DNA of 64,000 nucleotides from Ranitomeya imitator (taxonomy: Eukaryota): NCBI RefSeq assembly GCF_032444005.1, contig NC_091285.1, positions 22,134,001 through 22,198,000 of the forward strand, written 5' to 3'. Below are positions 11,291 through 60,300 of the stretch, in pieces. A program made the position numbers and the translations under genes. The notes under the pieces were generated by a model, which saw only the letters and a list, made by a program, of their open reading frames with translations, was not told the origin of the DNA and ran no database searches. Position 1 is the first letter of the stretch. Each line of letters starts with the position of its first letter.

Positions 11291-12319
11291 CTAAACATCT
11301 AGTCAGTTCTTCTGTTTTTTGAACACATCACAAGTGATTCAGATTCTTTCTTCTTCCCCCATCTTGGATCCCTTCTTTTAGTTCAGAATGGAGAACGTAC
11401 TCCCACTGATCTTGATTTGGCTGCACTTTTCCAAAAGTAGCAGGGACTCCGCTTATAACCTGGACCCCAAAATCCGCATTGTGAATTATGGCCCAATTGG
11501 GGATATTCCTGTCATCCCTGGGGGTCCATGACTGACAGCTGCTGTCTACTTTTTCTATGAGGTGAAGTCTACCCATTCCACCCTGAAGACCATATGTGCT
11601 GTAGAGGCTCCCCATGATGCAGCCGGTATGAGCCGGGCCCAGGTTGGCCGTATACCTCATTACAATGGGTGGTGATCCCCTCTACCTGCCAACCCGCACC
11701 ACGTCCTTCTGCCCCATAGGGTTAGGGGGGTGGTAATGGTAACCATCTCAAGGCAGGGGTCCAATTACCCATTTCCTATGGCCCCCTCCTCACCTCCATG
11801 TTGACCACAAGTCTCAAGTGACTAAGAAATGAAATCTTTGCGATTCCAAACCCCCCATGAGACCCCGAGCTGCTGTTTGTGTCTCCATAGGTGGTAGCCC
11901 CTCTTTATAATCGGCGACCCTGGCAGAGAGCGCCGGCATGGCTTCTGTGTTAGGACTGAATGTGCAAATAGTCTCCGGGCTCTGGAGCAAGATTTAATTC
12001 ACTCAAGCTGTTTCCGTGTGGAGTTTGTGACTTCAGCTTTGCCCTCACTTGAAATGCGGCCTGGAATTTACTACCCACCGGCCGAGCGGAATCACGTGTG
12101 GGACATTTCTGGTGCCACAGACGAGGACCGATGGCAGCGACAATAGCCGTAAGGTTAGGTCAGGAAATATTGACAGAAATACCCAAAAATGTGACGGAAA
12201 ATATTTCAATCTGTGGAAAATGTAAAGAAGATTTTTATGGAGGAGATTTCTGCTCCTAACGAGGGCTGAGTGATGATATAACAAGATGATCGCTGCTCGT
12301 CTAAAAGGCTCTTTTACAT

Positions 12320-15300
12320 GAATGTTTATACTTTTACACAATGGTTCGGTCCCCACACAGTTACACAATTGTTCGGTCCCCATACAGTTACACAATGGTT
12401 CGGTCCCCATACATTTACACAATTGTTCAGTCCCCATACATTTACAGAATTGTTCGGTCCCCATACAGTTACACAATTGTTCGGTCCTCATACATTTACA
12501 CAATTGTTCGGTCCCCATACAGTTACACAATTGTTCAGTCCCCATACATTTACACAATTGTTCAGTCTCCATACATTTACACAATTGTTCGGTCCCCATA
12601 CAGTTACACAATTGTTCGGTCCCCATAGTTACCCAATTGTTCAGTCCCCATACATTTACACAATTGTTCAGTCCCCATACATTTACACAATTGTTCGGTC
12701 CCCATACATTTACACAATTGTTCAGTCCCCACACAGTTACCCAATTGTTCAGTCCCCATACATTTACACAATTGTTCGGTCCCCATACATTTACACAATT
12801 GTTCAGTCCCCATACAGTTACACAATTGTTCAGTCCCCATACAGTTACCCAATTGTTCAGTCCCCATACATTTACACAATTGTTCAGTCCCCATACATTT
12901 ACACAATTGTTCGGTCCCCATACATTTACACAATTGTTCAGTCCCCATACATTTACACAATTGTTCAGTCCCCATACATTTACACAATTGTTCGGTCCTC
13001 ATACATTTACACAATTGTTCAGTCCCCATACAGTTACCCAATTGTTCAGTCCCCATACATTTACACAATTGTTCGGTCCCCATATATTTACACAATTGTT
13101 CAGTCCCCATACAGTTACACAATTGTTCAGTCCCCATACAGTTACCCAATTGTTCAGTCCCCATACATTTACACAATTGTTCAGTCCCCATACATTAACA
13201 CAATTGTTCGGTCCCCATACATTTACACAATTGTTCAGTCCCCATACAGTTACACAATTGTTCAGTCCCCATACAGTTACACAATTGTTCAGTCCCCATA
13301 CATTTACACAATTGTTCGGTCCCCATACATTTACACAATTGTTCAGTCCCCATACAGTTACACAATTGTTCAGTCCCCATACAGTTACACAATGGTTCGG
13401 TCCCCACACAGTTACACAATTGTTCGGTTCCCATACATTTACACAATTGTTCAGAGTCCATACATTTACACAATTGTTCAGTCCCCATACATTTACCCAA
13501 TTGTTCAGTCCCCATACAGTTACACAATTGTTCAGTCCCCATACAGTTACACAATTGTTCAGAGTCCATACATTTACACAATTGTTCAGTCCCCATACAT
13601 TTACCCAATTGTTCAGTCCCCATACAGTTACACAATTGTTCAGTCCCCATACAGTTACACAATTGTTCAGTCCCCACACAGTTACACAATTGTTCAGTCC
13701 CCATACAGTTACACAATTGTTCAGTCCCCACACAGTTACACAATTGTTCAGTCCCCATACAGTTACACAATTGTTCAGTCCCCATACAGTTACACAATTG
13801 TTCGGTTCCCATACAGTTACACAATTGTTCAGTCCCCATACAGTTACACAATTGTTCGGTTCCCATACAGTTACACAATTGTTCAGTCCCCATACAGTTA
13901 CACAATTATTCGGTTCCCATACATTTACACAATTGTTCAGTCTCCACACAGTTACACAATTGTTCAGTCCCCATACAGTTACACAATTGTTCGGTTCCCA
14001 TACATTTACACAATTGTTCAGTCTCCACACAGTTACACAATTGTTCAGTCCCATACAGTTACACAATTGTTCGGTTCCCATACATTTACACAATTGTTCG
14101 GTCCCCATACAGTTACACAATTGTTCGGTCCTCATACAGTTACACAATTGTTCGGTCCCCATACAGTTACACAATTGTTCGGTCCCCATACAGTTACACA
14201 ATTGTTCGGTCCCCATACAGTTACACAATTGTTCGGTCCCCATACAGTTACACAATTGTTCGGTCCCCATACAGTTACACAATTGTTCGGTCCCCATACA
14301 GTTACACAATTGTTCGGTCCCCATACTGTTACACAATTGTTCAGTCCCCATACAGTTACACAATTATCAGATCCCCATACAGTTACACAATTGTCGGTCC
14401 CCATACAGTTACACAATTGTTCGGTCCCCGTATATTTACACAATTGTTCGGTCCCCATACAGTTACACAATTGTTCGATCCCCATGCAGTTACACAATTG
14501 TTCAGTCCTCATACAGTTACACAATTGTTCAGTCCCCATATATTTACACAATTGTTCAGTCCCCATACATTTACACAATTGTTCGGTCCCCATACAGTTA
14601 CACAATTGTTCAGTCCCCATAGAGTTACACAATTGTCAGATCCCCATACAGTTACACAATTGTTCAGTCCCCATACATTTACAGAATTGTTCAGTCCCCA
14701 TACAGTTACACAATTGTTCGGTCCCCATACAGTTACGCAATTGTTCAGTCCCCATACAGTTACACAATTGTTCAGTCCCCATATATTTACACAATTGATC
14801 AGTCCTCATACATTTACACAATTGTTCGATCCCCATACAGTTACACAATTGTTCGGTCCTCATACATTTACAGAATTGTTCAGTCCCCATACAGTTACAC
14901 AATTGTTCGGTCCCCATACAGTTACGCAATTGTTCAGTCCCCATACAGTTACACAATTGTTCAGTCCCCATACATTTACACAATTGTTCGGTCCTCATAA
15001 TTTTACACAACTGTTCGGTCTCCATACATTTACACAATTGTTCAGTCCCCATACATTTACAGAATTGTTCAGTCCCCATACAGTTACACAATTGTTCGGT
15101 CCCCATACATTTACACAATTGTTCAGTCCCCATACATTTACAGAATTGTTCTGTCCCCATACAGTTACACAATTGTTCAGTCCCCATACATTTACACAAT
15201 TGTTCAGTCCCCATACATTTACAGAATTGTTCTGTCCCCATACAGTTACACAATTGTTCAGTCCCCATACATTTACACACACAATTGTTCGGTCCTCATA

Positions 15301-16195
15301 ATTTTACACAACTGTTCGGTCTCCATACATTTACACAATTGTTTGGTCCCCATACATTTACACAATTATTTGGTACCCATAATTTTACACAATTGTTCAG
15401 TCCCCATACAGTTACACAATTGATCAGTCCTCATACACTTACACAATTGTTCAGTCCTCATAGTTCCACAATTGATCGGTCCCCATACATTTACATAATT
15501 GTTCGGTCCCCAACCTTTTACGCAACTATTCTGTCTCCATACCTTTACACAAGTGTTTGGTCTCCATAGTTTTTCACAATTGTTTGGTCTTCTACATTTA
15601 CACAATTGTTCAGTCCTCATACTTTAACACCATAGTTCGGTCCCCAGAATTTTACACAATTGTTTAGTACCCATACTATACCACAATTGTTCAGTCTCCA
15701 TACTTTTACATGATCCTTAGGTCTCCATACTTTTACATGACCGTTCAGTCCCCGTACATTTACACAATCATTTAGTCCTCATACATTTACACAATCATTC
15801 AGTCCCCATACTATTACATGATCTTTAAGTCTCCATACTTTTAGATAAGCGTTCAGTCTCCATACTTTTACATGATCGTTCATTCCCCATACTTTTATAT
15901 GATCCTTCAGTCTCCATACTTTTACATGATCATTCAGTCTCCATACTTTTACATGACCGTTCAGTCCCCATACGTTTACACAATCATTCAGTCCCCATAC
16001 ATTTACACAATCATTTAGTCCTCATACATTTACACAATCATTAAGTCCCCATATTATACCTGATCATTCAGTCTCCATACTTTTAGATGATCCTTCAGTC
16101 TCCATACTTTTACATGATCATTCAGTCTCCATTCTTTTACATGATCATTCAGTCTCCATACTTTTACATGATCGTTCAGTCCCCATACTTTTACT
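12320..16195. repeat. 27-bp minisatellite, ~3.9 kb (~140 units)
   Basis: Unit CCCCATACA(G/T)TTACACAATTGTTC(A/G)GT. It produces 9-aa periodic ORFs in several frames. Confidence 0.97.
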
Positions 16196-25676: not shown

Positions 25677-27304
25677 CAGTACAGACCAAAAGTTTGGACA
25701 CACCTTCTCATTAAAAGATTTTTCTGTATTTTCATGACTATGAAAATTGTACATTCACACTGAAGGCATCAACACTATGAATTAACACATGTGGAATTAT
25801 ATACTTAACAAAAAAGTGTGAAACAACTGAAATTATGTCTTATATTCTAGGTTCTTCAAAGTAGCCACCTTTTGCTTTGATGACTGCTTTGCACACTCTT
25901 GGCATTCTCTTGATGAGCTTCAGGAGGTAGTCACAGGGAATGGTCTTCCAACAATCTTGAAGGAGTTCCCAGAGATGCTTAGCGCTTGTTGGCCCTTTTG
26001 CCTTCACTCTGCGGTCCAGCTCACCCCGAACCATCTGGATTGGGTTCAGGTCTGGTGACTGTGGAGGCCAGGTCATCTGGCGTAGCCCCCCATTACTCTC
26101 CTTCTTGGTCAAATAGCCCTTACACAGCCTGGAGGTGTGTTTGGGGTCATTGTCCTGTTGAAAAATAAATGATGGTCCAACTAAACGCAAACCGGATGGA
26201 ATAGCATGCCGCTGCGAGATGCTGTGGTAGCCATGCTGGTTCAGTATGCCTTCAAGTTTGAATAAATCCCCAACATTGTCACCAGCAAAGCCCCCCCACA
26301 CCATCACACCTCCTCCTCCATGCTTCACGGTGGGAACCAGGCATGTAGAGTCCATCCGTTCACCTTTTCTGCGTCCCACAAAGACACAGTGGTTGGAACC
26401 AAAGACCTCAAATTTGAACTCATCAGACCAAAGCACAGATTTCCACTGGTCTAATGTCCATTCCTTGTGTTCTTTAGCCCAAACAAGTCTCTTCTGCTTG
26501 TTGCCTGTCCTTAGCAGTGGTTTCCTAGCAGCTATTTTACCATGAAGGCCTGCTGCACAAAGTCTCCTCTTAACAGTTGTTGTAGAGATGTGTCTGCTGC
26601 TAGAACTCTGTGGCATTGACATGGTCTCTAATCTGAGCTGCTGTTAACCTGCGATTTCTGAGGCTGGTGACTCGGATAAACTTATCCTCAGAAGCAGGGG
26701 TGACTCTTGGTCTTCCTTTCCTGGGGCGGTCCTCATGTGAGCCAGTTTCTTTGTAGCGCTTGATGGTTGTTGCCAATGCACTTGGGGACACTTTCAAAGT
26801 TTTCCCAATTTTTCGGACTGACTGACCTTCATTTCTTAAAGTAATGATGGCCACTCGTTTTTCTTTACTTAGCTGCTTTTTTCTTGCCATAATACAAATT
26901 CTAACAGTCTATGCATTAGGACTATCAGCTGTGTATCCACCAGACTTCTGCTCACTACAACTGATGGTCCCAACACCATTTATAAGGCAAGAAATCCCAC
27001 TTATTAAACCTGACAGGGCACACCTGTTTAGTGAAAACCATTCCCGGCGACTACCTCTTGAAGCTCATCAAGAGAATGCCAAGAGTGTGCAAAGCAGTCA
27101 TCAAAGCAAAAGGTGGCTACTTTGAAGAACCTAGAATAGAAGACATAATGTCAGTTGTTTCACACTTTTTTGTTAAGTATATAATTCCACATGTGTTAAT
27201 TCATAGTTTTGATGCCTTCAGTGTAAATGTACAATTTTCATAGTCATGAAAATACAGAAAAATCTTTAAATGAGACGGTGTGTCCAAACTTTTGGTCTGT
27301 ACTG
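25677..27304 (-). mobile_element. Near-full-length Tc1/mariner transposon with long TIRs; transposase disrupted
   Basis: TIR CAGTACAGACCAAAAGTTTGGACACACC at both ends, 3' TA. The transposase (26890-25840) has one frameshift near 26610. Motifs WSDE, QQDNDPKH and SPDLNPIQ are present, with the third catalytic E read as Q. Confidence 0.95.
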
Positions 27305-31691: not shown

Positions 31692-33284
<1,593 letters not shown>

Positions 33285-38600: not shown

Positions 38601-41600
38601 AGCCGGGAATGTTTCCGTGGAAGTCTCGGATCTTCGGTTAGAGCTCTGCGAGTCGGTAATGAGCATGCGGAAACACTTAAGCTTTACGATGAGCTGGAGG
38701 CGCTGGATATAGAGGGAGGGTGCACTGCATGCCGGGAAACGTTAACCACTGTGGACCCAGGAGAAGACGCTTTGTGGGGGGCATGAATGTGTACCACCCC
38801 ATGCATCCCTATACCAACGATAGCCCCCCAGTGTCAATCACTAGCCCCGGTATGCCCACATAGACCAATATTGGCCGCAGAGCCCCCCGCCGGCGCCTTA
38901 CCTGAGCTCTGTTGAACTCTTTGGTGAAGATGCACATCTCTCGCTTCACTTGTTCTTCCATCTTCTGCAACTCCGTCGCCTTCTTGTCAAGTTCCAGTCT
39001 CGTTTTGTCGTAGAGGCTTTCTATGGGGGGAGGTGAAAATTAGGGATGCGGAATAATCCTATAAGGGGTACAGTGCAGAGGGGGGGCACCCAAACACATC
39101 CCACCCATGAGAACTGTGAATAGGCAATGTTCCCCCCCAACCCCCAGCCTGTCTTCTTCTCACCTGCAAACCTCTGGTCCTCCAAGGCTTTGGCCCACAC
39201 GTGCTGCTGCTGGAGGGACCATTCTCGGAGCTGCTTTTGCTGTTCTTTTTTCCGGATCTTCTCCGTCAGATCCTCTCCCATCAGCCGCTGGACCCCGGAT
39301 ACACCGCAGCGGGGGTCGTCATCAGACACTCGCGGGGGCAGATCTTTCTTTAAGGCCAGTGGGTCGTACAGGTCGTATTCTCGTCGGTCTTCCTTCTTCT
39401 GGTACTGGAGTCTGAACTCGTTGATGGCCGCGTTCAGGTTCCGGATGTCGTCCTTTTGCCGCTGGTCCAGTAAGCGGAGAGTTTGGTCGTTTTGCACCAT
39501 CTGTGCATCTGGAAATTAAAGGGAAAGGACGTGAATGTCGAAAGCTCCCATCGCGCACCACCGTGGGCCAACGGGTCTCGTCACTCCACCCCATAATCGA
39601 AGTCCATCCCCCCCATACTTATGGCAGTTTCCCCGACTTCCCTTGTGATAGATACGGACTCTTTTATTTTAAACCGTTTTCATTAAACCCCTCATATTGT
39701 ACTTGTTGCAACATACTTTATTAACCCCTTCACCTCAGGCCATTTTCCGTTTTTAACTCCTCCTTTTCCCAGAGCCACAACTTTTTTTTAATATTTCCAT
39801 TAATATGGCCATATGCGGGATTGTTTTATGCGGGACGAGTGGTACTTTTGAATGACACCATTGATTTTACCATATAATGTACTAAACAACTATAAGTGCG
39901 GTGAATTTGCAAAAAGAGTCCAATTCCACAACTGTTTTTTGGGTATTTTATTTACCATGTTCACTAAATGATAAATCTGACCTGTCATTATGATTCTCCA
40001 GGTCATTGCGAGTTCATAGACACCAAACATGTCTAGGTTATTTTTTTATTTAAGTGGTGAGAACAAAATTCCGAAATTTGTTTGAAAATTTTTTTTGTTC
40101 TTGTCGCCATTTTCCGAGTCCGGTAGCGTCTCCATCTTTCGTGATCTGGGGTTGGGTGAGGGCTTATTTTTTTGCGCACCGTGCTGACGTTTTTATTGAT
40201 ACCATTTTGGGGTAGATACGATGTTTTATTGTAATGTTGCAACTGCCAAAAAAAAGGTAATTCTGGAGTTTTTATTTTTTTTTTCGTTACACCCTTTACC
40301 GATCGGATTACTTTATTTTATATTTCGACAGACTGGACTTTTCTGAATGCGGCGATAACAAATATGTGTATTTTTTTTATTGTTTTATTTTCAACAGGCA
40401 AAAGGACAACGATTTGAACTTTTAATTTTTTTTTTTAATTTTTCCCACGTTTTACTTTATTTAATAGTCCCCTTAGGGGACTTGAAGCAGCGATCGTCCG
40501 CTGATGGCATCCGCAGCTCTTCTTCTGATTAGCCGTCCTGGCCATGACGTCCCACCGCAGCGATGATGATGCACCAGGCCGGCTAATCAGAAGAAGAACC
40601 ACAGATGCCATCAGGTAGGAGGTGGAACCTCAGGGATCTGGTCCACCTGATGCACCAGGTCCGGCGAAACGTCAACGTGTAGATCAGGTGGTGAAACTCT
40701 TCACGTACCGAACGCCTCCTGCCGCTTATTTTCAATCTCTTTCTGGATCTTTTTGTCGTGCACTTGAGAGTCCAAGGCCTCCGAATCCACCTGGGAAAAT
40801 AAAAGCAGCGATATTTCATGAATATAACACCTTACGTCAGGATTTCTCCCACGGTAACACGGACACGGGCGACTTCTAGCCCAAAAAGTTAAAAAACATG
40901 TGACATCCTGTGGATCCGCATCATACAGATTTCTGGCGCCCTCTACTGATTATGACAAAATAAAGCGGCCTGCAACTTTCAAGCTTTTAGGAAACTACAA
41001 CTCTCAGCATACCCTAATAGCTGGATGGGAGTTGTAGATTCGCCAACAACTAGAGAGCCGCGGATTACTGAGCGAATGCCGCCGTCTGCATATTGTGGTC
41101 GCAGCGTCGCACACACAGAGGTATTATTAGACCTTTCGGGGGATCCCAGGGTCTCGGGTGGCAACTATGTGGTCTATGACAATATGACAATACAGCAGCA
41201 GCCGCCAACGTGTTTACCCAGAACCCCGGAAAGTGTGGGAGACTTCCAGAAAGGGCGCAGGTCTCACAGACTCCCCGAAAATCTCAAGAGCGGTGCCAGG
41301 AAGGGATCTGGGAATGAAGAGAGAGGTACACGGATGGGGAGAGGGTAGTAATAGCCGTATGCCAGGGCTGAAGTCTGTAAGTAGGGGTGGGGGAATGGCC
41401 TGGGGTCTGTATGAAGGAGGGGGCTGGTATGGGGTCTGCATGAACGAAGGAGTCTGGTATGGAGTTTATATGAAGGAGGGGGCTGGTATGGGGTCTGTAT
41501 GAAGGCGGAGGCTGGTATGAGGTCTGTATGAAGGCAGAGGCTGGTATGAGGTCTGTATGAAGGAGGGGGCTAGTATGGGGTCTGTATGAAGGAGGGAGGC

Positions 41601-44600
41601 TTTTATGGGGTCTGTATGAAGGAAGGGGCTGGTATGGGGTCTGTATGAAGGCAGAGGCTGGTATGAGGTCTGTATGAAGGAGGGGGCTAGTATGGGGTCT
41701 GTATGAAGGAGGGAGGCTTTTATGGGGTCTGTATGAAGGAGGGGGCTGGTATGGGGTCTGTATGAAGGCGGAGGCTGGTATGGGGTCTGTATGAAGGCGG
41801 AGGCTGGTATGAGGTCTGTATGAAGGCGGAGGCTGGTATGAGGTCTGTATGAAGGCAGAGGCTGGTATGAGGTCTGTATGAAGGAGGGGGCTAGTATGGG
41901 GTCTGTATGAAGGAGGGAGGCTTTTATGGGGTCTGTATGAAGGAAGGGGCTGGTATTGGATCTGCATGAAGGAGGGGGCTGGTATGGGGTCTGCATGAAG
42001 GAAGGAGTCTGGTATGGAGTTTATATGAAGGAGGGGGCTGGTATTGGGTCTTTATGAAGGAGGGGGCTGGTATGGGGTCTGTATGAAGGAGGGGGGTTGG
42101 TATGGGTCTGTATAAAGGAGGGGGCTGGTATGGGGTCTATATGAAGGAGGTGGCTCTTATGGGTATGTATGAAGGAGGGGGCTGGTATGGGGTCTATACG
42201 AAGGAGGGGGCCCTTATAGGGTCTATATGAAGGAGGGGGCTCTTATGGGTATGTATGAAGGAAGGGGCTCTTATGGGTATGTATGAAGGAGGGGGCTCTT
42301 ATAGGGTCTATATGAAGGAGGGGGCTGGTATGGGGTCTATATGAAGGAGGGGGCTCTTATAGGGTCTATATGAAGGAGGGGGCTGTTATGGGGTCTATAT
42401 GAAGGAGGGGGCTGGTATGGGGTCTATATGAAGGAGGGGGCTGGTATGGGGTCTATATGAAGGAGGGGTCTGGTATGGAGTCTATATGAAGGAGGGGGCT
42501 GGTATGGGGTCTATATGAAGGAGGGGGCTGGTATGGGGTCTATATGAAGGAGGGGGCTCTTATAGGGTCTATATGAAGGAGGGGGCTGGTATGGGGTCTA
42601 TATGAAGGAGGGGGCTCTTATAGGGTCTATATGAAGGAGGGGGCTGTTATGGGGTCTATATGAAGGAGGGGGCTGTTATGGGGTCTATATGAAGGAGGGG
42701 GCTGGTATGGGGTCTATATGAAGGAGGGGGCTGGTATGGGGTCTATATGAAGGAGGGGGCTGGTATGGAGTCTATATGAAGGAGGGGGCTCTTATAGGGT
42801 CTATATGAAGGAGGGGGCTGTTATGGGGTCTGTATGAAGGAGGGGGCTCTTATAGGGTCTATATGAAGGAGGGGGCTCTTATAGGGTCTATATGAAGGAG
42901 GGGGCTCTTATAGGGTCTATATGAAGGAGGGGGCTGGTATGGGGTCTGTATGAAGGAGGGGGCTCTTATAGGGTCTATATGAAGGAGGGGGCTGTTATGG
43001 GGTCTATATGAAGGAGGGGGCTGTTATGGGGTCTATATGAAGGAGGGGGCTGGTATGGGGTCTATATGAAGGAGGGGGCTGGTATGGGGTCTATATGAAG
43101 GAGGGGGCTCTTATAGGGTCTATATGAAGGAGGGGGCTCTTATAGGGTCTATATGAAGGAGGGGGCTCTTATAGGGTCTATATGAAGGAGGGGGCTGGTA
43201 TGAGGTCTATATGAAGGAGGGGGCTCTTATAGGGTCTATATGAAGGAGGGGGCTCTTATAGGGTCTATATGAAGGAGGGGGCTCTTATAGGGTCTATATG
43301 AAGGAGGGGGCTGGTATGGGGTCTATATGAAGGAGGGGGCTCTCCACCCTCCTGTCAAGATCACACCTCACCACCTGCACGCTTGACCCGCTCCCATCCC
43401 ACCTCATCCCTAACCTTTCCACGGTCTTCATCCCAACCCTAACGCACCTCTTCAACCTCTCACTCACAACAGGTGTCTTTCCCTCATCCTTCAAGCATGC
43501 CAAGATCACACCCATCCTCAAAAAGCCCTCCCTCGACCCATCCTCTGTGTCTAGCTATCGCCCAATATCTCTTCTCCCTTATGCCTCCAAATTGCTGGAG
43601 CAACACGTCCATCTTGAACTGTCCTCCCACTTCTCCTCCTGCTCCCTCTTTGATCGGTTACAATCAGGCTTCCGTTCCCATCACTCAACTGAAACTGCCC
43701 TAACTAAAGTCACCAATGACCTACTAACTGCCAGGAGCAAGCGACACTACTCTGTCCTCCTTCTCCTGGACTTGTCTTCTGCCTTTGACACTGTAGACCA
43801 CTCCCTTTTGCTACAAATCCTCTCATCCCTTGGCATCACAGACTTGGCCCTTTCCTGGATCTCGTCATATCTGACAGACCGAACATTCAGTGTCTCCCTC
43901 CCCCACACCACCTCCTCACTTCGCCCCTTGTCAGTTGGTGTTCCTCAAGGCTCTGTTCTAGGACCCCTACTCTTCTCCATCTACACTTTCGGCCTGGGAC
44001 AGCTCATAGAATCCCACGGTATGCAGTACCATCTCTACGCTGACGACACGCAGATCTACCTCTCCGGACCTGACCTCTCCTCCTTGCTTACCAAAATCCC
44101 GCACTGTCTGTCTGCCATTTCAGCCTTCTTTTCTGCTCGCTTTCTACAACTGAACATGGACAAAACAGAATTCATCATCTTTCCCCCATCTCACTCTACC
44201 CCTCCACCAGACCTATCCATCAATGTCAATGGCTGCTCACTTTCCCCAGTCCCACACGCCCGGTGCCTCGGGGTGATCCTCGACTCTGCCCTCTCTTTCA
44301 AGCCACATATCCAAGCCCTTGCCTCCTCCTGTCGTCTCAAACTCAAAAATATTTCCCGGATCCGTGCTTTCCTTGACCGCAACACTGCAAAAACGCTAGT
44401 GCATGCCCTTATCATCTCCCGCCTCGACTACTGCAACCTCCTACTCTCTGGACTCCCCTCTAGCACTCTGGCACCACTCCAATCCATCCTACACTCTGCT
44501 GCCCGACTAATCCACCTGTCCCCCCGCTATTCCCCAGCCTCTCCCCTATGTCAAGCCCTTCACTGGCTTCCTATCGCCCAGAGACTCCAGTACAAAACCC

Positions 44601-46567
44601 TCACACTGACATACAAAGCCATCCACAACCTGTCTCCTCCATACATCTGTGACATGGTCTCCCGGTACCTACCTACACGCGACCTCCGATCCTCCCAAGA
44701 CCTCCTTCTCTACTCCCCTCTCATCTCTTCTTCCCATAACCGCATCCAAGACTTCTCCCGTGCTTCCCCCATACTCTGGAACTCTCTACCCCAACACATC
44801 AGACTTGCGCCTACCATAGAAACCTTCAAAAAGAACCTGAAGACTCATCTCTTCCGACAAGCCTACAGCCTGCAGTGATCCTCAACCTACTGAACAGCCG
44901 CACAGCCAGCTCTTCCCTCTCCTAGTGTATCCTCACCCACCCCCTGCAGACTGTGAGCCCTCGCGGGCAGGGTCCTCCCTCCTTATGTACTCGTGTGCCT
45001 TGTTATCTGCTCATGTTTAATGTATTTGTCTATATTTGCCCCGTATTCACATGTAAAGCGCCATGGAATAAATGGCGCTATAAAAATGTATAATAATAAT
45101 AATAATAATAGGGTCTATATGAAGGAGGGGGCACTTATGGGTATGTATGAAGGAGGGGGCTGGTATGGGGTCTATATGAAGGAGGGGGCACTTATGGGTA
45201 TGTATGAAGGAGGGGGCTGGTATGGGGTCTATATGAAGGAGGGGGCTAGTATGGGGTCTATATGAAGGAGGGGGCTCTTATAGGGTCTATATGAAGGAGG
45301 GGGCTGTTATGGGGTCTGTATGAAGGAGGGGGCTGGTATGGGGTCTATATGAAGAAGGGGGCTCTTATAGGGTCTATATGAAGGAGGGGGCTGGTATGGG
45401 GTCTATATGAAGGAGGGGGCTCTTATAGGGTCTATATGAAGGAGGGGGCACTTATGGGTATGTATGAAGGAGGGGGCTGGTATGGGGTCTATATGAAGAA
45501 GGGGGCTCTTATAGGGTCTATATGAAGGAGGGGGCTGGTATGGGGTCTATATGAAGAAGGGGGCTCTTATAGGGTCTATATGAAGGAGGGGGCTCTTATA
45601 GGGTCTATATGAAGGAGGGGGCTGGTATGGGGTCTATATGAAGGAGGGGGCTCTTATAGGGTCTATATGAAGGAGGGGGCTCTTATAGGGTCTATATGAA
45701 GGAGGGGGCTGGTATGGGGTCTATATGAAGGAGGGGGCTCTTATAGGGTCTATATGAAGGAGGGGGCACTTATGGGTATGTATGAAGGAGGGGGCTGGTA
45801 TGGGGTCTATATGAAGGAGGGGGCACTTATGGGTATGTATGAAGGAGGGGGCTGGTATGGGGTCTATATGAAGGAGGGGGCACTTATGGGTATGTATGAA
45901 GGAGGGGGCTGGTATGGGGTCTGTAAACAGATGGTGTCTATCACCATGAGGGGTCTCTAAATATGGGAGTTCTGTAAACAGGAAGGGGTGGTGGTCTGGG
46001 CTCTGTATAAAGGAGGGGGTCTGGTACTTGGATCTGTAAAAAGGGAAAGTTTATAAATATGGGGGTCTGTTAATTATCGGGAGGAGGTATATATTAAAGG
46101 GAAGGGGTCTGGTCTGCAGGGGCGGTGGTCTTGGATCTGTAAACAGGAGGGGTTGGGTCTGAATACAGGAGCCTGGGGTCTGGACTGGGGTCTGCTTAAA
46201 GGGGAGGTGTAAATATGGAGGGTCTGCACACAGGAAAGGGCGGCGCTCTGGGGTCTGTACACATGGAGGGTCTGGTCCACAGCGTCTCGTCATTTGGGGG
46301 GACGTAGATATACGACCTAGGCTGCTGAAGTCTGTGGACACGTAGCCATCCAGCTTTTCCAGGATCCTGACTCATTTTGCAGCGCTGCCGTAAACAAAGC
46401 TTTGCAGATTAGAGGGGGTTCTTCCTCACCCCAATGGTCCTGGCTCTGGTGTCAAACACCCGGCTCTGCCTCTGCTGCTCGGCATGCCTCCTCCTCTGCA
46501 GCACGGCGGCCTCTGCCCGGTCCTGCTCGAACATGTCGCCTTTTTCCCTTCTCTCACTCAGCAGCAT
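35555..46567 (-). CDS. RIBC2: RIB43A-like coiled-coil protein 2 (ciliary microtubule inner protein), complete 7-exon gene
   Basis: Exons 46567(or 46534)-46430, 40790-40709, 39508-39164, 39020-38902, 36754-36527, 36455-36289 and 35636-35555 join in frame with GT-AG introns. Product is 375 aa from 46534 or 386 aa from 46567. Recognisable RIB43A motifs: [68 protein letters not shown]. Head-to-head with SMC1B, as in other vertebrates. Confidence 0.93.
36289..36455 (-). CDS. RIBC2: RIBC2 exon 6
   Basis: ccacag|[24 protein letters not shown]...HKA+CA|gtgagt; 167 nt, preceded by a 71-nt intron. Confidence 0.92.
36527..36754 (-). CDS. RIBC2: RIBC2 exon 5
   Basis: attcag|AEESLERKK...[28 protein letters not shown]...QEKM|gtacgg; 228 nt. 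Confidence 0.92.
36870..38030 (-). mobile_element. Truncated, degenerate Tc1-like transposon in RIBC2 intron 4
   Basis: [24 protein letters not shown] and [12 protein letters not shown] fragments. Ends are approximate. Confidence 0.75.
38902..39020 (-). CDS. RIBC2: RIBC2 exon 4
   Basis: catag|..[22 protein letters not shown]...KEFNRAQ|gtaagg; 119 nt. Confidence 0.9.
39164..39508 (-). CDS. RIBC2: RIBC2 exon 3
   Basis: ttccag|..AQMVQNDQ...[13 protein letters not shown]...LEDQRFA+G|gtgaga; 345 nt. Confidence 0.92.
39722..40500. mobile_element. TTAA-CCCCTT (piggyBac-like) non-autonomous element remnant in RIBC2 intron 2
   Basis: Begins TTAACCCCTTCA. The AT-rich body resembles 49785-50540. No clear right end. 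Confidence 0.5.
40709..40790 (-). CDS. RIBC2: RIBC2 exon 2
   Basis: ttcccag|[27 protein letters not shown]+G|gtacgt; 82 nt. Confidence 0.9.
41395..45922. repeat. 29-bp G-rich minisatellite in RIBC2 intron 1, split by an L2 insertion
   Basis: Unit ATGAAGGAGGGGGCTGGTATGGGGTCT(A/G)T with a CTCTTATAGG variant. Segments are 41395-43343 and ~45106-45922. Confidence 0.95.
43344..45110 (+). mobile_element. 5'-truncated L2-clade LINE with an uninterrupted reverse-transcriptase frame
   Basis: The frame is open from ~43331 to TGA 44878. Motifs [33 protein letters not shown] and YADDTQIY. The 3' UTR ends TGTAAAGCGCCATGG..GGCGCTATAAAAATG(TAA)n. Confidence 0.95.
46430..46567 (-). CDS. RIBC2: RIBC2 exon 1 (start codon either 46567 or 46534)
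   Basis: ([11 protein letters not shown])[35 protein letters not shown], then donor GTGAGG. Confidence 0.85.
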
Positions 46568-56400: not shown

Positions 56401-57321
56401 TTACATTACTAAGCATCGTGTCATAACTTGGTCAGAGCAATAAAACAGTCAAAGCTGCAATCATTGTCCTCTCAATCTTTTTTTTCTTACTGTTATTGAT
56501 CCTGGTAGTAAAACGACTGCAATATGTTTTACAGCAAATCTCTGGACGAGCACAAGAAGCAAGAGGAGAATCTCGTGCATGAAATCGAATCCGGAAAGCA
56601 GAGAATGTCTGAAGTCAACGAAGAACTGAACAGCACGGTCATCGACCTGCAGAACGCCCGAATCGATTCCCACGAAGGAAGCCGTCAGAAGAGGAAGACC
56701 GAAATCCTGGAGAGCATGAAAAGAATGTATCCTGATGCCGTGGTAAAACATGGCTGCCTACTTTCCTGAAAGCAAAATTCGCTAACCCCCATTGTGTATG
56801 GGTGTCGCAGTCTTAATTGTAACTTTTTACTTTGCAGTACGGGAAATTATTCGAACTGTGTAACCCAATCCACAAAAAATATCAGCTCGCTGTTACCAAA
56901 GTGTTCGGCAAATACATGTACGCCATCGTCGTGTCTGCCGAGAAGGTGGCAAGAGACTGCATCAAGTTTCTGAAAGAGGAGAGGGCAGAGCCAGAGACCT
57001 TCCTTTCTTTGGACTACCTGGAAGTAAGTTTTAATTTTGCATAAAATAACCCGGTAACAGGTATTATAGTATCAGCGATAGAAACAATGTCCTTTCGTCA
57101 TCTATCTACAGATAAAGCCGATAAACGAAAAGCTAAGAGAAATAAAAGGTGCAAAAATGATGATTGATGTGGTGCAGTGCTCCAGCCCCTCATTAAAAAA
57201 AGTGATTCAGTTTGTATGCGGCAACGGACTGGTATGTGAGACGGTAAAAGAAGCAAAACACATTGCGTTTGATGGACCTCAAAGGCACAAAGTAAGTTAT
57301 CGATTCATTGCTTAGAAAGAA

Positions 57322-57352
<31 letters not shown>

Positions 57353-60300
57353 AAGGTGATATCCAGCCATCCTGTCTGACCTCATCTGGGCTTGGAGAGT
57401 CGAAAGTGCACTCCCATCATTCGCAGGGTGGTGGATGATCACCGTGCAGTCGTCTCTCCACATCAAGTGTCAAATCATATAGAGGAGATTTTGCCTAGAA
57501 AATCCATTTAATTCCAAGTATTTAACTTTTTAGTGTCAGCAGCGGAAATGTACAGCATTAATGCCGGATATGTATAACAAGTACTAGATAAGCGGAGAGA
57601 GATGTGTCCACCGCGTCTGCTAGCGGCTTGACACATCTCTCTCCGCTTATCTAGTACTTGTTATACATATCCGGCATTAACTTAAGACGCTGCTCCTTTA
57701 GTGCCCCGTGACCGTATGGTCTCATATTCTATACACTAGTACGTTTACTGATGAAGGTCCGTTATGCAGGACCGAAACGTTTGGGTACTACTACAATAAA
57801 TTACGCACTAAAAGCATCCAGTTGAGTGCTAGGTTCTTTTATCATACTGTAGTGGGGTAAGAACTGGTGAAAAAGAGTAAAAGTGAGTGTATATATATAT
57901 ATTATATATTATTATACTAGATGGTGGCCCGATTCTAACGCATCGGGTATTCTAGAATGTGCATGTCCACGTAGTATATTGCCCAGCGACGTAGTACATT
58001 GCCCAGCGACGTAGTATACAGCACAGGGCCACGTAGTATATTGCCCAGCCACGTAGTATATTGCCCAGTGATGTAGTATATTGCACGGTCACATAGTATA
58101 TTGCCCAGCGACCTAGTATACAGCACAGAGCCACGTAGTATATTGGCCAGTTACATAGTATATTGCCCAGTGACGTAGTATATTGCCCAGCCATGTAGTA
58201 TACAGCACAGAGCATATTGCCCAGCCACATAGTATATTGCCCAGCTACGTAGTATATTGCCCAGTTACGTAGTATATTGCCCAGCCACGTATATCACAGG
58301 TTACAAAATAAACATACTCACCTTCCGATCCAAGGGCCCCTTGTAGTTCTGTCGGCAGCTTCCGGTCCCAGGGTGTGATGACGTCGCGGTCACATGACCA
58401 TGACGTCATGGCAGGTCCTTCTCGCGCAGGCACGCAGGACCTGTGATGACGTCGCGGTCACATGCATAGGCAGCATCAATTGTAAAAACTTGGTCACACA
58501 GGGTTAATAGCGGCGGTAACGGAGTGAGTTACCCATGGCATAACGCGGTCTGTTACCGCCGGCATTAACCCTGTGTGAGCGGTGACCGGAGGGGAGTATG
58601 TGGGCGCCGACTGCGGGGGAGTAAGGAGTGGCCATTTTCTTCCAGTCTGTGCCCGTCGCTGATTGGTCGTGGCTGTTTTGCCGCGACCAATCAGCGATTT
58701 GGATTTCCTTGACAGACAGAGGCCGCGACCAATGAATATCCGTGACAGACAGACGGAAGTGACCCTTAGACAATTATATAGTAGATATGTATGACCCCCT
58801 AATCACCATCCTTGTATGCGTGGCCCCCATCCTGGTATACATTTTGTCCCCTCATCCCCATCCTGGTCTCTATCGTATAAATACTTATTTATTTGGAAAA
58901 AAACGGGGCCTAAATAGCCTTTTTTCTCTGTCACTCCCATGTTCTAAAAGATACAGATTTAATAAGAACTTTATATTAAAGGTACCCAATCAACTTCATT
59001 TGTTGAACTAGTGACCAGGGATCCCTGTTTCCTCAATTTCCTGTTTTTCCTCTTTGTCATGTATTGATATGAAATAATCCCCAAAATCACAAAAGAAGAG
59101 AAAGCTTTAACTGCAGTTTCATGTATGTGGTGTTTATCTTTCCAGACCGTTTCTCTGGATGGAACTTTATTCATGAAATCCGGGGTTATTTCCGGAGGTT
59201 CAAGCGATTTGCGATTTAAAGCAAAACGCTGGGACGATAAAGAGATAAATGAGTTAAAAGAGAAGAAAGATTGCCTGATGAGTGAGTTGAAGGTAAGTGC
59301 ATTGTGGTATGAAGTTTTTCCTCCTATTGTCTCTTTATTGTTTTGATTGTTTGTTTTTTAACTTAGGAACTAATGAAGATAAAGAGGAAGGAGAGCGACC
59401 TAAAACAGCTTCAGGCCCAGTTACAGGGAACGCAGACTCGTCTTAAGTATTCCCAAAGCGAGCTCGAAGTCATCATGAAGAAACAACTCGTGAACTGCTT
59501 TGCAGTAATAAAACACTATTACAAGTTTCATCTTCTTTTGTGTATAATAACGATAAAGTATTTTTTTCTTGCTGTGTTTATTGGGGGGGGGGGGGGACAG
59601 AAGACCATGGGTGACTATTGCTACCATGCAGCTGCGGGCAAATGTTAGCTCCTTCTCTACAAGCTATAACACTCCTACAGCCACTGAACTAATAAGCGTG
59701 TTCACAAGAAAGAAGGAGAAGCCAAGTGATGGTTGTTGATGGTTGGAACTGAAAAAAAGCCATGCAGATGAAGAAATTCTGTTTCCTCTTCTGTATAGTT
59801 GGAAGACTAAGGGTTTTCCTAAAAGCAGAGTCTGGGGACAGATAAGCCAACCAGCTCTCTGCTGCGTGAGAACATTGCGACTAAGAGAAGCAACCAAAGC
59901 TCAACGTGTTCCTTGAAGAGTAGACGCCCACCCAAAGCAGCTCCTACCTGAGGAGCAGACACTTCTGTTGCATCATCCTCCATAGAAAATGTGCAAGAAC
60001 TTGCTTTCGCAAAAATTGCTTTACAAATCCTGATCTGTTAAACGATTGGAGCTTTAGACGCCCTCTAGGTGACGAAAAGAGAGCCTAAGCGGTGAAGCAA
60101 GGGTGTTTCAGGCATCCAGATTAAGCAAAAGGCATTTTCTTGGATGGGAAGGAGATGGGGAAAAACATGACTTCTTCATAAGGACTGAAGGTATAGGGGG
60201 AAAGCTCTACATGGAGAGTGGCAGTGACAAAAAATGGTGACTACAAACCTGGATGTTGTAAAATAGCCACCCAAAAGAAGCCGTAAAGAGGCAAATACAT

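What the first reader, a model, noticed from the sequence alone, without database searches (positions are those of the whole stretch)
57737..57830. Intact-looking hammerhead ribozyme on the sense strand of SMC1B intron 11
Seen: CUGAUGA-A-GGUCC(guuaugca)GGACC-GAAA-CG-U-U, with a 5-bp stem II, a loopless palindromic ACGU helix III, and a bulged stem I (UAGUAC/GUACUA plus A-U and U.G pairs). AATAAA follows at 57795 and GAGTGCT at 57824. Established: Penelope-like retroelements carry minimal type I hammerheads with a palindromic helix III that often act as dimers, and amphibians carry hammerhead-containing repeats. Inference: every SMC1B pre-mRNA includes this motif, so cleavage after U57781 (GUU triplet), together with the adjacent intronic poly(A) signal, could truncate germline transcripts just after the hinge-coding exon.
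Basis: partly seen in the sequence, partly recalled or inferred. Interest (0 to 1): 0.72.

Follow-up and report, generated by a model that had tools for sequence, protein, structure and literature searches.

The report
Lone Penelope-type hammerhead relic in intron
The hammerhead-ribozyme motif is really there and is too good to be chance, but it is an ordinary single leftover copy of the small, dimer-dependent hammerhead carried by Penelope-like jumping genes in frogs, and nothing suggests that it cuts the SMC1B transcript.

Summary
On the + strand at 57737-57790 all hammerhead core bases are present. There is a 5-bp helix II, a bulged helix I and a loopless palindromic ACGU in place of helix III. 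The predicted cut lies between 57781 and 57782.

Chance expectation is about 1.6e-5 per window before helix I is required, and below 0.1 per 6-Gb genome with it.

The motif carries the published hallmarks of the minimal hammerhead of Penelope-like elements (PLEs): an extra base between A9 and G10.1, a G10.1-C11.1 pair, and a palindromic 15.2-16.2 pair with no loop 3. A metagenome scan found the same core in a genuine animal PLE family, which has a GIY-YIG ORF upstream, head-to-head copies and the PLE "tail".

Rfam finds nothing here. It also misses the genuine PLE control at its gathering score, so its silence says nothing.

The functional reading is not supported:
- These motifs cut only as dimers, and weakly.
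- No second motif exists in the 64 kb on either strand.
- Modelled intermolecular dimerisation is very weak.
- The AATAAA lies 3' of the cut, so it cannot polyadenylate the upstream exons once the RNA is cut.

This scan already holds 524 hammerhead notes on this poison-frog genome, including similar lone intronic motifs. No reads could be examined.

The parts
57737..57747 (+). Helix I, 5' strand: distal UAGUAC (57737-42), 2-nt bulge (57743-44), proximal U, U, A (57745-47)
   Evidence: Sequence. Pairs with 57782-57790. The MFE fold keeps the distal 6 bp. A duplex this stable occurs in 2-5% of random flank pairs.
57748..57755 (+). Core box C3-A9 (CUGAUGA), plus one extra A between A9 and G10.1
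   Evidence: An extra base at this position is a stated hallmark of PLE minimal hammerheads (PMC4209133).
57756..57773 (+). Helix II: 5 Watson-Crick pairs starting with G10.1-C11.1, closed by an 8-nt loop
57774..57781 (+). G12 A13 A14, then the palindrome A15.1-C-G-U16.1 (helix III only in a dimer), then U17. Predicted cut after 57781.
   Evidence: Dimer model. The same GAAACGU-U junction occurs in a genuine PLE family.
57782..57790 (+). Helix I, 3' strand: U, G, G, then GUACUA
57704..57890 (+). Presumed retroelement fragment that carries the motif. It runs from the right-hand duplication of the nested MITE to the (TA)n run. Both ends are inferred, not shown.
   Evidence: No second copy in the window. 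CpG observed/expected is 0.90 here against 0.49 for the whole window (only 7 CpGs). The (TA)n run starts 109 nt after the cut; reported PLE 3' ends lie about 85-125 nt after it in Anolis (my arithmetic from PMC11167929) and 53 or 86 nt in the metagenome family.
57536..57696 (.). Nested palindromic MITE-like insert just upstream. Not part of the ribozyme.
   Evidence: Perfect 51-nt arms at 57558-57608 and 57630-57680. Outer inverted AGCAGCG/CGCTGCT, flanked by the direct repeat TTTAGTG at 57529-57535 and 57697-57703 (read).
57795..57800 (+). AATAAA hexamer, 3' of the predicted cut
   Evidence: There are 43 such hexamers on the + strand of the window and 2 in this intron.
57292..59145 (+). Host intron between an SMC-hinge exon and the next exon of an SMC1-type gene
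   Evidence: Exons searched one by one: SMC_hinge at E 1e-10 and 3e-7; matches SMC1A residues 578-637. GT at 57292 and AG at 59144-59145.

Best explanation
This is a solitary relic of the minimal type I hammerhead carried by Penelope-like retroelements (PLEs). In those elements the motif sits at the junction of the pseudo-LTR and the ORF.

Most likely a 5'-truncated PLE copy, or a non-autonomous derivative of one, landed in an AT-rich or (TA)n spot of this SMC1B-type intron. A small palindromic MITE was inserted just upstream of the motif.

In its parent element the motif works only when two copies pair. The palindrome ACGU of two RNAs forms a 4-bp helix III, and the helix I strands swap between the two copies. 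Here there is one copy and no partner. It is therefore transcribed passively as part of the intron, removed with it, and has no effect on the host mRNA.

Shown: the motif itself, its improbability by chance, its match to the published PLE hallmarks, the same core in a genuine PLE family, and the absence of a partner in the window.
Inferred: the boundaries of the fragment, its parent family in this genome, and its inactivity in vivo.
For: - All core bases and helices are present.
- Chance expectation is 1.6e-5 per window without helix I, times 0.02-0.05 for helix I.
- The four features that Cervera and de la Pena list as unexpected, recurrent traits of PLE minimal hammerheads are present or can be judged: a base between 9 and 10.1, a G10.1-C11.1 pair, a palindromic 15.2-16.2 pair, and family structure (PMC4209133). 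That paper counts about 9,000 such motifs in Xenopus tropicalis, mostly as single truncated copies.
- The metagenome scan found 16 loci with the same core. Fourteen are one animal repeat family with a perfect 6-bp helix I, head-to-head copies, and two classes of 3' end 53 and 86 nt after the cut. These two classes match the optional 30-40 bp PLE 'tail' (PMC11167929). The family also has a GIY-YIG ORF about 210 nt upstream (L013:1927-2550:-, E 9.6e-6).
- The window has no second motif on either strand.
- The dimer model is weak.
- Single motifs are reported inactive and dimers weak.
- Earlier notes of this scan describe many PLE hammerheads in this same genome.
Against: - No PLE ORF (RT or GIY-YIG) lies in the window. 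The only RT (43547-44878) is LINE-like.
- No other copy of the 57681-57905 stretch could be found: none in the window, and this genome could not be searched. Family membership in this frog therefore rests on the shape of the motif.
- Outside the motif, similarity to the metagenome loci is limited to about 18 nt in one locus, L008.
- Rfam gives no hit even at E<=10.
- Helix I next to the core is weak: one A-U pair and two U.G pairs.
- Inactivity in vivo is inferred, not measured.
Confidence: 0.82

Rival explanations
1. The motif is an active intronic ribozyme that cuts SMC1B pre-mRNA at 57781|57782 and lowers or truncates germline transcripts.
For: - The core is intact and lies on the sense strand of the intron.
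- Intronic hammerheads with a likely host role exist in amniotes (HH9/HH10; own knowledge).
- The block has kept its CpGs.
Against: - A loopless helix III requires a dimer, and no partner lies in the window.
- Single minimal hammerheads show no detectable cleavage, and dimers are weak.
- The modelled dimer gains only about 2.9 kcal/mol, which is negligible at the concentration of one nascent transcript.
- The AATAAA lies downstream of the cut, so it cannot serve the upstream exons. It is also a common hexamer.
- In Anolis no RNA-seq reads start or end at the PLE hammerhead cut site, even for an expressed element (PMC11167929).
Confidence: 0.04
2. The motif is a chance look-alike that never belonged to a ribozyme-bearing element.
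For: - No Rfam hit.
- No second copy and no PLE ORF in the window.
- The scan has read very many windows, so rare chance motifs will turn up.
Against: - Expectation is below 0.1 per 6-Gb genome.
- It carries traits that a naive hammerhead search would not demand: the extra base at 9/10.1 and the palindromic 15.2-16.2 pair.
- Frog genomes hold thousands of real copies, so the prior strongly favours descent from one.
- The Rfam negative says nothing, because a genuine PLE hammerhead scores only 20.2 bits against a threshold of 48.5, and on the wrong model.
Confidence: 0.04
3. The carrier is not a PLE proper but a solo monomer of a non-LTR retrozyme or another non-autonomous, PLE-derived repeat. 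This is a sub-case of the best explanation.
For: - Retrozyme monomers are spread evenly along Xenopus chromosomes, and about 44% overlap introns (bioRxiv 10.64898/2026.07.22.740005).
- Earlier notes report a 384-nt retrozyme family in this genome.
- No ORF remnant lies next to the motif.
Against: - There is no tandem repeat of the unit.
- Animal retrozymes usually carry canonical type I hammerheads with a short looped helix III. The extra base at 9/10.1 with no loop 3 is the PLE signature.
Confidence: 0.15

Closest known systems
Minimal hammerheads of metazoan Penelope-like elements (Cervera and de la Pena 2014, PMC4209133; Lunse, Weinberg and Breaker 2017, cited in PMC6765202; the 2017 paper itself could not be read here)
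   Same: - Type I topology with a full core.
- One unpaired base between A9 and G10.1.
- G10.1-C11.1 pair.
- Palindromic 15.2-16.2 pair with no loop 3, so helix III forms only in a dimer.
- Short proximal helix I, followed by an irregular loop 1 and a closing stem.
- Mostly found as single truncated copies; abundant in amphibians.
   Different: - Helix II has 5 bp here, against 7-8 bp in the Schistosoma families described.
- No PLE ORF or pseudo-LTR could be recognised beside it.
- The parent family in this genome was not identified.
Animal PLE family recovered from metagenome contigs (L001-L007, L009-L014, L016)
   Same: Identical core, extra A, helix II stem GGUCC/GGACC, and the GAAACGU-U junction with U at position 17 and U at 1.1.
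   Different: - That family has a perfect 6-bp helix I and a 6-nt loop II.
- It has many copies, head-to-head pairs, two tail classes and a GIY-YIG ORF.
- Its flanks are unrelated to the window. The shared stem II is partly forced by the search pattern.
Poseidon element of Anolis carolinensis, PAc (Frangieh et al. 2024, PMC11167929)
   Same: - The hammerhead lies at the junction of the pseudo-LTR and the ORF.
- Copies end a short distance downstream of the cut, at AT-rich targets.
- Here a (TA)n run begins 109 nt after the cut.
   Different: - Here the reading frame from the ATG inside the core box closes after 24 codons.
- The 3' end of the fragment is inferred only.
Conserved intronic hammerheads HH9/HH10 of amniotes (Rfam RF02275, RF02277; own knowledge)
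   Same: Sense-strand hammerhead inside an intron of a protein-coding gene.
   Different: - Those have a closed, stable helix III and loop-loop tertiary contacts.
- They cut as monomers and are conserved across species.
- This motif matches neither Rfam model and needs a dimer.
Non-LTR retrozymes / newt satellite 2 (Cervera and de la Pena 2020, PMC7229834)
   Same: Amphibian repeats with type I hammerheads whose short palindromic helix III favours dimers.
   Different: Those are tandem arrays of units of a few hundred nucleotides. Here there is one unit and no tandem copy.

Membership tests
Hammerhead ribozyme (general) | Conserved core: C3 U4 G5 A6 N7 G8 A9, G12 A13 A14, the A15.1-U16.1 pair, and H17 | tested here: met
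   All are present at 57748-57754 and 57774-57781, with H17 = U.
Hammerhead ribozyme (general) | Three helices around the core | tested here: inconclusive
   Helices I and II form within one molecule. Helix III has no loop and can exist only between two molecules. The modelled double hammerhead (-24.1 kcal/mol) is not favoured over two monomers (-25.6 kcal/mol).
Hammerhead ribozyme (general) | Mg2+-dependent self-cleavage at H17 | not testable with these tools
   Needs an in vitro assay. No reads were available.
PLE minimal hammerhead | One base between A9 and G10.1 | tested here: met
   A57755. Feature listed in PMC4209133.
PLE minimal hammerhead | G10.1-C11.1 pair closing helix II | tested here: met
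   G57756-C57773.
PLE minimal hammerhead | Palindromic 15.2-16.2 pair, with loop 3 absent or palindromic | tested here: met
   C57778 and G57779 lie between A15.1 and U16.1, giving ACGU.
PLE minimal hammerhead | Lies in the pseudo-LTR of an element that encodes RT and GIY-YIG | tested here: inconclusive
   No PLE ORF in the window. Most genomic copies are truncated, so absence is expected. The control family does have the GIY-YIG ORF.
PLE minimal hammerhead | Belongs to a multi-copy consensus family in the same genome | not testable with these tools
   No copy in the window. A by-sequence look-up in earlier notes was blank. The genome itself cannot be searched.
PLE minimal hammerhead | A second copy nearby to allow the active dimer | tested here: not met
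   The relaxed descriptor finds only this site in 64 kb, both strands.
Rfam hammerhead families (RF00163, RF00008, RF02275, RF02276, RF02277) | Score at or above the family's gathering threshold | tested here: not met
   No hit at gathering score, nor at E<=10 on 601 nt or 81 nt. As a control, a genuine PLE hammerhead reaches only 20.2 bits against 48.5.
Non-LTR retrozyme | Tandem repeats of a short non-coding unit, each with a hammerhead | tested here: not met
   No direct repeat of the unit around 57700-57900.
Conserved intronic hammerhead (HH9/HH10 type) | Stable closed helix III and conservation at the orthologous intron | tested here: not met
   Helix III is loopless. Conservation could not be tested.

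The most novel reading that the evidence does not exclude
In germ cells, PLE transcripts may be abundant and four chromatids may be transcribed side by side. This lone sense-strand minimal hammerhead could then pair with sister SMC1B transcripts, or with RNAs of its own repeat family. It would cut a fraction of SMC1B pre-mRNA, and a transposon relic would so become a dosage brake on a meiotic cohesin.
Probability: 0.03. Interest if true: 0.6.

Novelty: new member of a known kind. Interest (0 to 1): 0.12.

Why it matters
It matters little. It adds one more copy to a class already counted in the thousands in frog genomes, and noted hundreds of times in this genome by this scan.

Three points may be useful:
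- Rfam's hammerhead models miss genuine PLE minimal hammerheads as well. A negative Rfam scan is therefore no argument against them.
- A lone copy in an intron should be taken as inert until RNA ends are seen at the cut site.
- A poly(A) signal downstream of a ribozyme cut cannot rescue the upstream fragment.

Tried and rejected
- **Rfam.** Searched at gathering score over the whole window and at E<=10 on 601 nt and 81 nt. No hammerhead hit. This is uninformative given the control.
- **Sequencing runs.** There is therefore no expression, copy-depth or RNA-end evidence.
- **Earlier notes.** Look-ups by place and by sequence were blank. Look-ups by words gave only context.
- **Viral contigs.** The motif pattern gave 0 hits.
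- **Second copy in the window.** I looked for a second copy of the flanks and for a PLE ORF. Neither exists. The 443-aa RT ORF is LINE-like.
- **The other core match.** The match at 32424-32458 is rejected as chance, because it lies inside a Tc1 transposase frame.
- **L015.** This metagenome hit has G after U16.1 and no helix I. It is probably a chance or decayed match.
- **Lunse et al. 2017 (PMC5785218).** Not held in the library, so it is cited only through the review.
- **Supplement of PMC4209133.** Not held.
- **51-bp perfect hairpin at 57558-57680.** I considered that it could be a PLE fold-back joint. I rejected this because it has its own outer inverted ends and a flanking TTTAGTG duplication, so it is a separate nested insert.
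- **Exons.** They were searched one by one by reference.
- **Metagenome contigs.** None was taken for human. They carry a PLE, which mammals lack according to PMC4209133.

Full report
**1. What is there**

- The hammerhead core box CUGAUGA occupies 57748-57754. One extra A follows at 57755.
- Helix II is five Watson-Crick pairs (57756-57760 with 57769-57773), closed by an 8-nt loop.
- G12 A13 A14 follow at 57774-57776.
- Next comes the four-base palindrome ACGU (57777-57780). This is A15.1, C15.2, G16.2 and U16.1 with no loop between them.
- U17 is at 57781, so the predicted scissile bond is 57781|57782.
- Helix I has three proximal pairs: A57747-U57782, U57746.G57783 and U57745.G57784. A two-base bulge follows, then six distal pairs (57737-57742 with 57785-57790).
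- The single-strand fold keeps helices I and II (-16.1 kcal/mol, z = -1.6, unremarkable in itself).

**2. The host gene**

- Exons 56838-57023 and 57112-57291, searched separately by reference, are SMC hinge. The second matches residues 578-637 of SMC1A structures.
- The intron runs from GT at 57292 to AG at 59144-59145. The motif is on the sense strand.
- A RIB43A-domain exon lies on the opposite strand at 39021-39500. This fits the divergent RIBC2/SMC1B gene pair known in human (my own knowledge), so SMC1B is a reasonable name.
- I did not check the intron number and built no joined coding model.

**3. Is it chance?**

- With the window's base composition I computed the expectation for this combination: core box, optional extra base, a 5-bp helix II starting G-C with any loop of 3-20 nt, GAAA, a palindromic dinucleotide, U, and a non-G base. 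The result is 1.6e-5 per window, or about 1.5 per 6 Gb.
- A helix I at least as stable arises in 2-5% of random flank pairs. The whole motif is therefore expected less than 0.1 times per genome of this size.
- A much looser descriptor finds this site and nothing else in the 64 kb on either strand. It allowed CNGANGA, helix II of 3 or more pairs including G.U, up to 12 nt inside helix III, and helix I of 3 or more pairs.
- The only other CTGATGA...GAAAC match lies in a Tc1 transposase frame and lacks a proper helix II.

**4. What kind of hammerhead is it?**

Cervera and de la Pena (PMC4209133) defined the minimal hammerhead of Penelope-like elements (PLEs). They listed traits that emerged without being part of their search descriptor:
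- a base between positions 9 and 10.1;
- a conserved G10.1-C11.1 pair;
- a palindromic 15.2-16.2 pair, with loop 3 absent or palindromic;
- a short helix I with an ill-defined loop 1.

All of these are present here. They counted about 9,000 such motifs in Xenopus tropicalis, mostly as single copies taken to be truncated PLEs.

Earlier notes of this scan say the genome is a poison frog. They already hold 524 hammerhead notes on it, including PLE hammerheads and lone intronic motifs judged inert. I did not test those notes.

**5. Related sequences from elsewhere**

- An exact-pattern scan of metagenome contigs returned 16 loci. The pattern was the core, the extra A, the helix II stem and GAAACGT, with a free loop.
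- Fourteen loci are one repeat family of some animal host. The contigs also carry TRAF, RING and Ig-domain ORFs.
- In this family helix I is a perfect 6-bp duplex, and the junction GAAACGU-U is the same as here, including U17 and U1.1.
- Several copies sit head to head (L003, L010, L012, L016).
- Downstream of the cut the copies stop matching one another at two points, 53 nt and 86 nt after it. This is the optional 30-40 bp "tail" that Frangieh et al. traced to two internal start sites of reverse transcription (PMC11167929).
- In L013 an ORF with a GIY-YIG domain ends about 210 nt upstream on the same strand (E 9.6e-6, above Pfam's cut-off).
- The very core found in the window therefore occurs in a genuine endonuclease-bearing PLE.
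- Outside the motif the window shares only about 18 nt with one locus, L008. These loci are analogues, not the parent family.

**6. Why Rfam is silent**

The window gives no hammerhead hit at the gathering score, nor at E<=10 on short stretches. As a control I ran the genuine PLE hammerhead of L013. It gets only 20.2 bits against a threshold of 48.5, on the type III model and with a wrong fold. The Rfam models expect a closed helix III, so they are blind to this class.

**7. Context in the intron**

- The 51-bp perfect inverted repeat just upstream is a separate element. It has outer inverted ends AGCAGCG/CGCTGCT and is flanked by the direct repeat TTTAGTG (57529-57535 and 57697-57703; read). 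It is therefore a nested MITE-like insert.
- The block that carries the hammerhead (57704-57890) has CpG observed/expected of 0.90, against 0.49 for the window. With only 7 CpGs this is a weak hint that the insert is fairly young. Youth would also explain why the core looks intact without invoking selection.
- (TA)n runs lie at 57320-57352 and from 57891. PLEs are reported to target AT-rich DNA.
- The distance from the cut to the right-hand (TA)n is 109 nt. In Anolis the 3' ends lie about 85-125 nt after the cut by my arithmetic from the positions reported in PMC11167929, and in the control family 53 or 86 nt after it. The ends of the fragment remain inferred.
- No PLE ORF lies in the window. 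The RT ORF at 43547-44878 is LINE-like.

**8. Does it act on SMC1B?**

Nothing supports this, for five reasons.
- The literature read here states that single minimal hammerheads show no detectable cleavage. Dimers or trimers cut weakly, mostly at non-physiological Mg2+.
- In Anolis no RNA-seq reads begin or end at the cut site, even for an expressed PLE.
- The active form needs a second RNA with the same helix I strands, because in the double hammerhead both helix III and helix I are intermolecular. No partner exists in the window.
- In a nearest-neighbour model the double-hammerhead fold has -24.1 kcal/mol, against -25.6 for two open monomers and -32.2 for two MFE monomers. The whole dimer ensemble is only about 2.9 kcal/mol better than two free monomers, which means a millimolar dissociation constant. 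The model ignores tertiary contacts and Mg2+.
- The proposed cooperation with AATAAA cannot work as stated. The hexamer lies 3' of the cut, so after cleavage it is on the other fragment. It is also a common hexamer, with 43 on this strand of the window.

**9. Verdict**

It is a real, PLE-type, dimer-dependent minimal hammerhead, present as one lone and probably inert copy in an intron. This is an ordinary finding for a frog genome, and the functional inference is unsupported.

Activity in vivo therefore remains untested rather than disproved.

Noticed in passing
window 57536-57696: A palindromic MITE-like insert. It has perfect 51-nt arms (57558-57608 and 57630-57680) around a 21-nt loop, and outer inverted ends AGCAGCG/CGCTGCT. 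It is flanked by the direct repeat TTTAGTG (57529-57535 and 57697-57703). CpG observed/expected is 1.06, so it looks young. As RNA it would form a very long hairpin inside the SMC1B intron.
   Followed up: partly
window 57917-58790: Another repeat-rich insert in the same intron. It holds an array of a 20-bp unit (about 57945-58311), two exact 23-nt repeats containing TGACGTC at 58374 and 58442, an 84%-matched 38-nt hairpin at 58494-58578 whose arms resemble the MITE arm motif (TTAATGCCGG), and an 18-nt hairpin at 58656-58697.
   Followed up: no
window 12318-15301: Overlapping ORFs of 200-826 aa in several frames on both strands, with no Pfam domain of note. This pattern suggests a long stop-free repetitive or low-complexity tract, not a gene.
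   Followed up: no
window 43547-44878 (+): A 443-aa ORF with an RVT_1 domain (E 1e-34). Its best solved relatives are LINE-1 ORF2 and R2 proteins. It is a LINE-type retrotransposon fragment, not a PLE.
   Followed up: partly
window 25840-26622 (-) and about 32400-32520 (-): Tc1/mariner-type transposase remnants (HTH_Tnp_Tc3_2 and DDE_3 domains). The second one contains a chance CTGATGA...GAAAC match.
   Followed up: partly
window 39021-39500 (-): An exon with a RIB43A domain (E 1e-37) on the strand opposite to the SMC1 hinge exons. This fits the divergent RIBC2/SMC1B gene pair.
   Followed up: no
L001-L016 (metagenome contigs): Host-derived animal contigs in metagenomes carry a PLE family whose copies end in two classes, 53 and 86 nt after the hammerhead cut. 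This is a clean natural example of the PLE 'tail'. Several copies are head to head, with the two hammerheads facing each other.
   Followed up: partly
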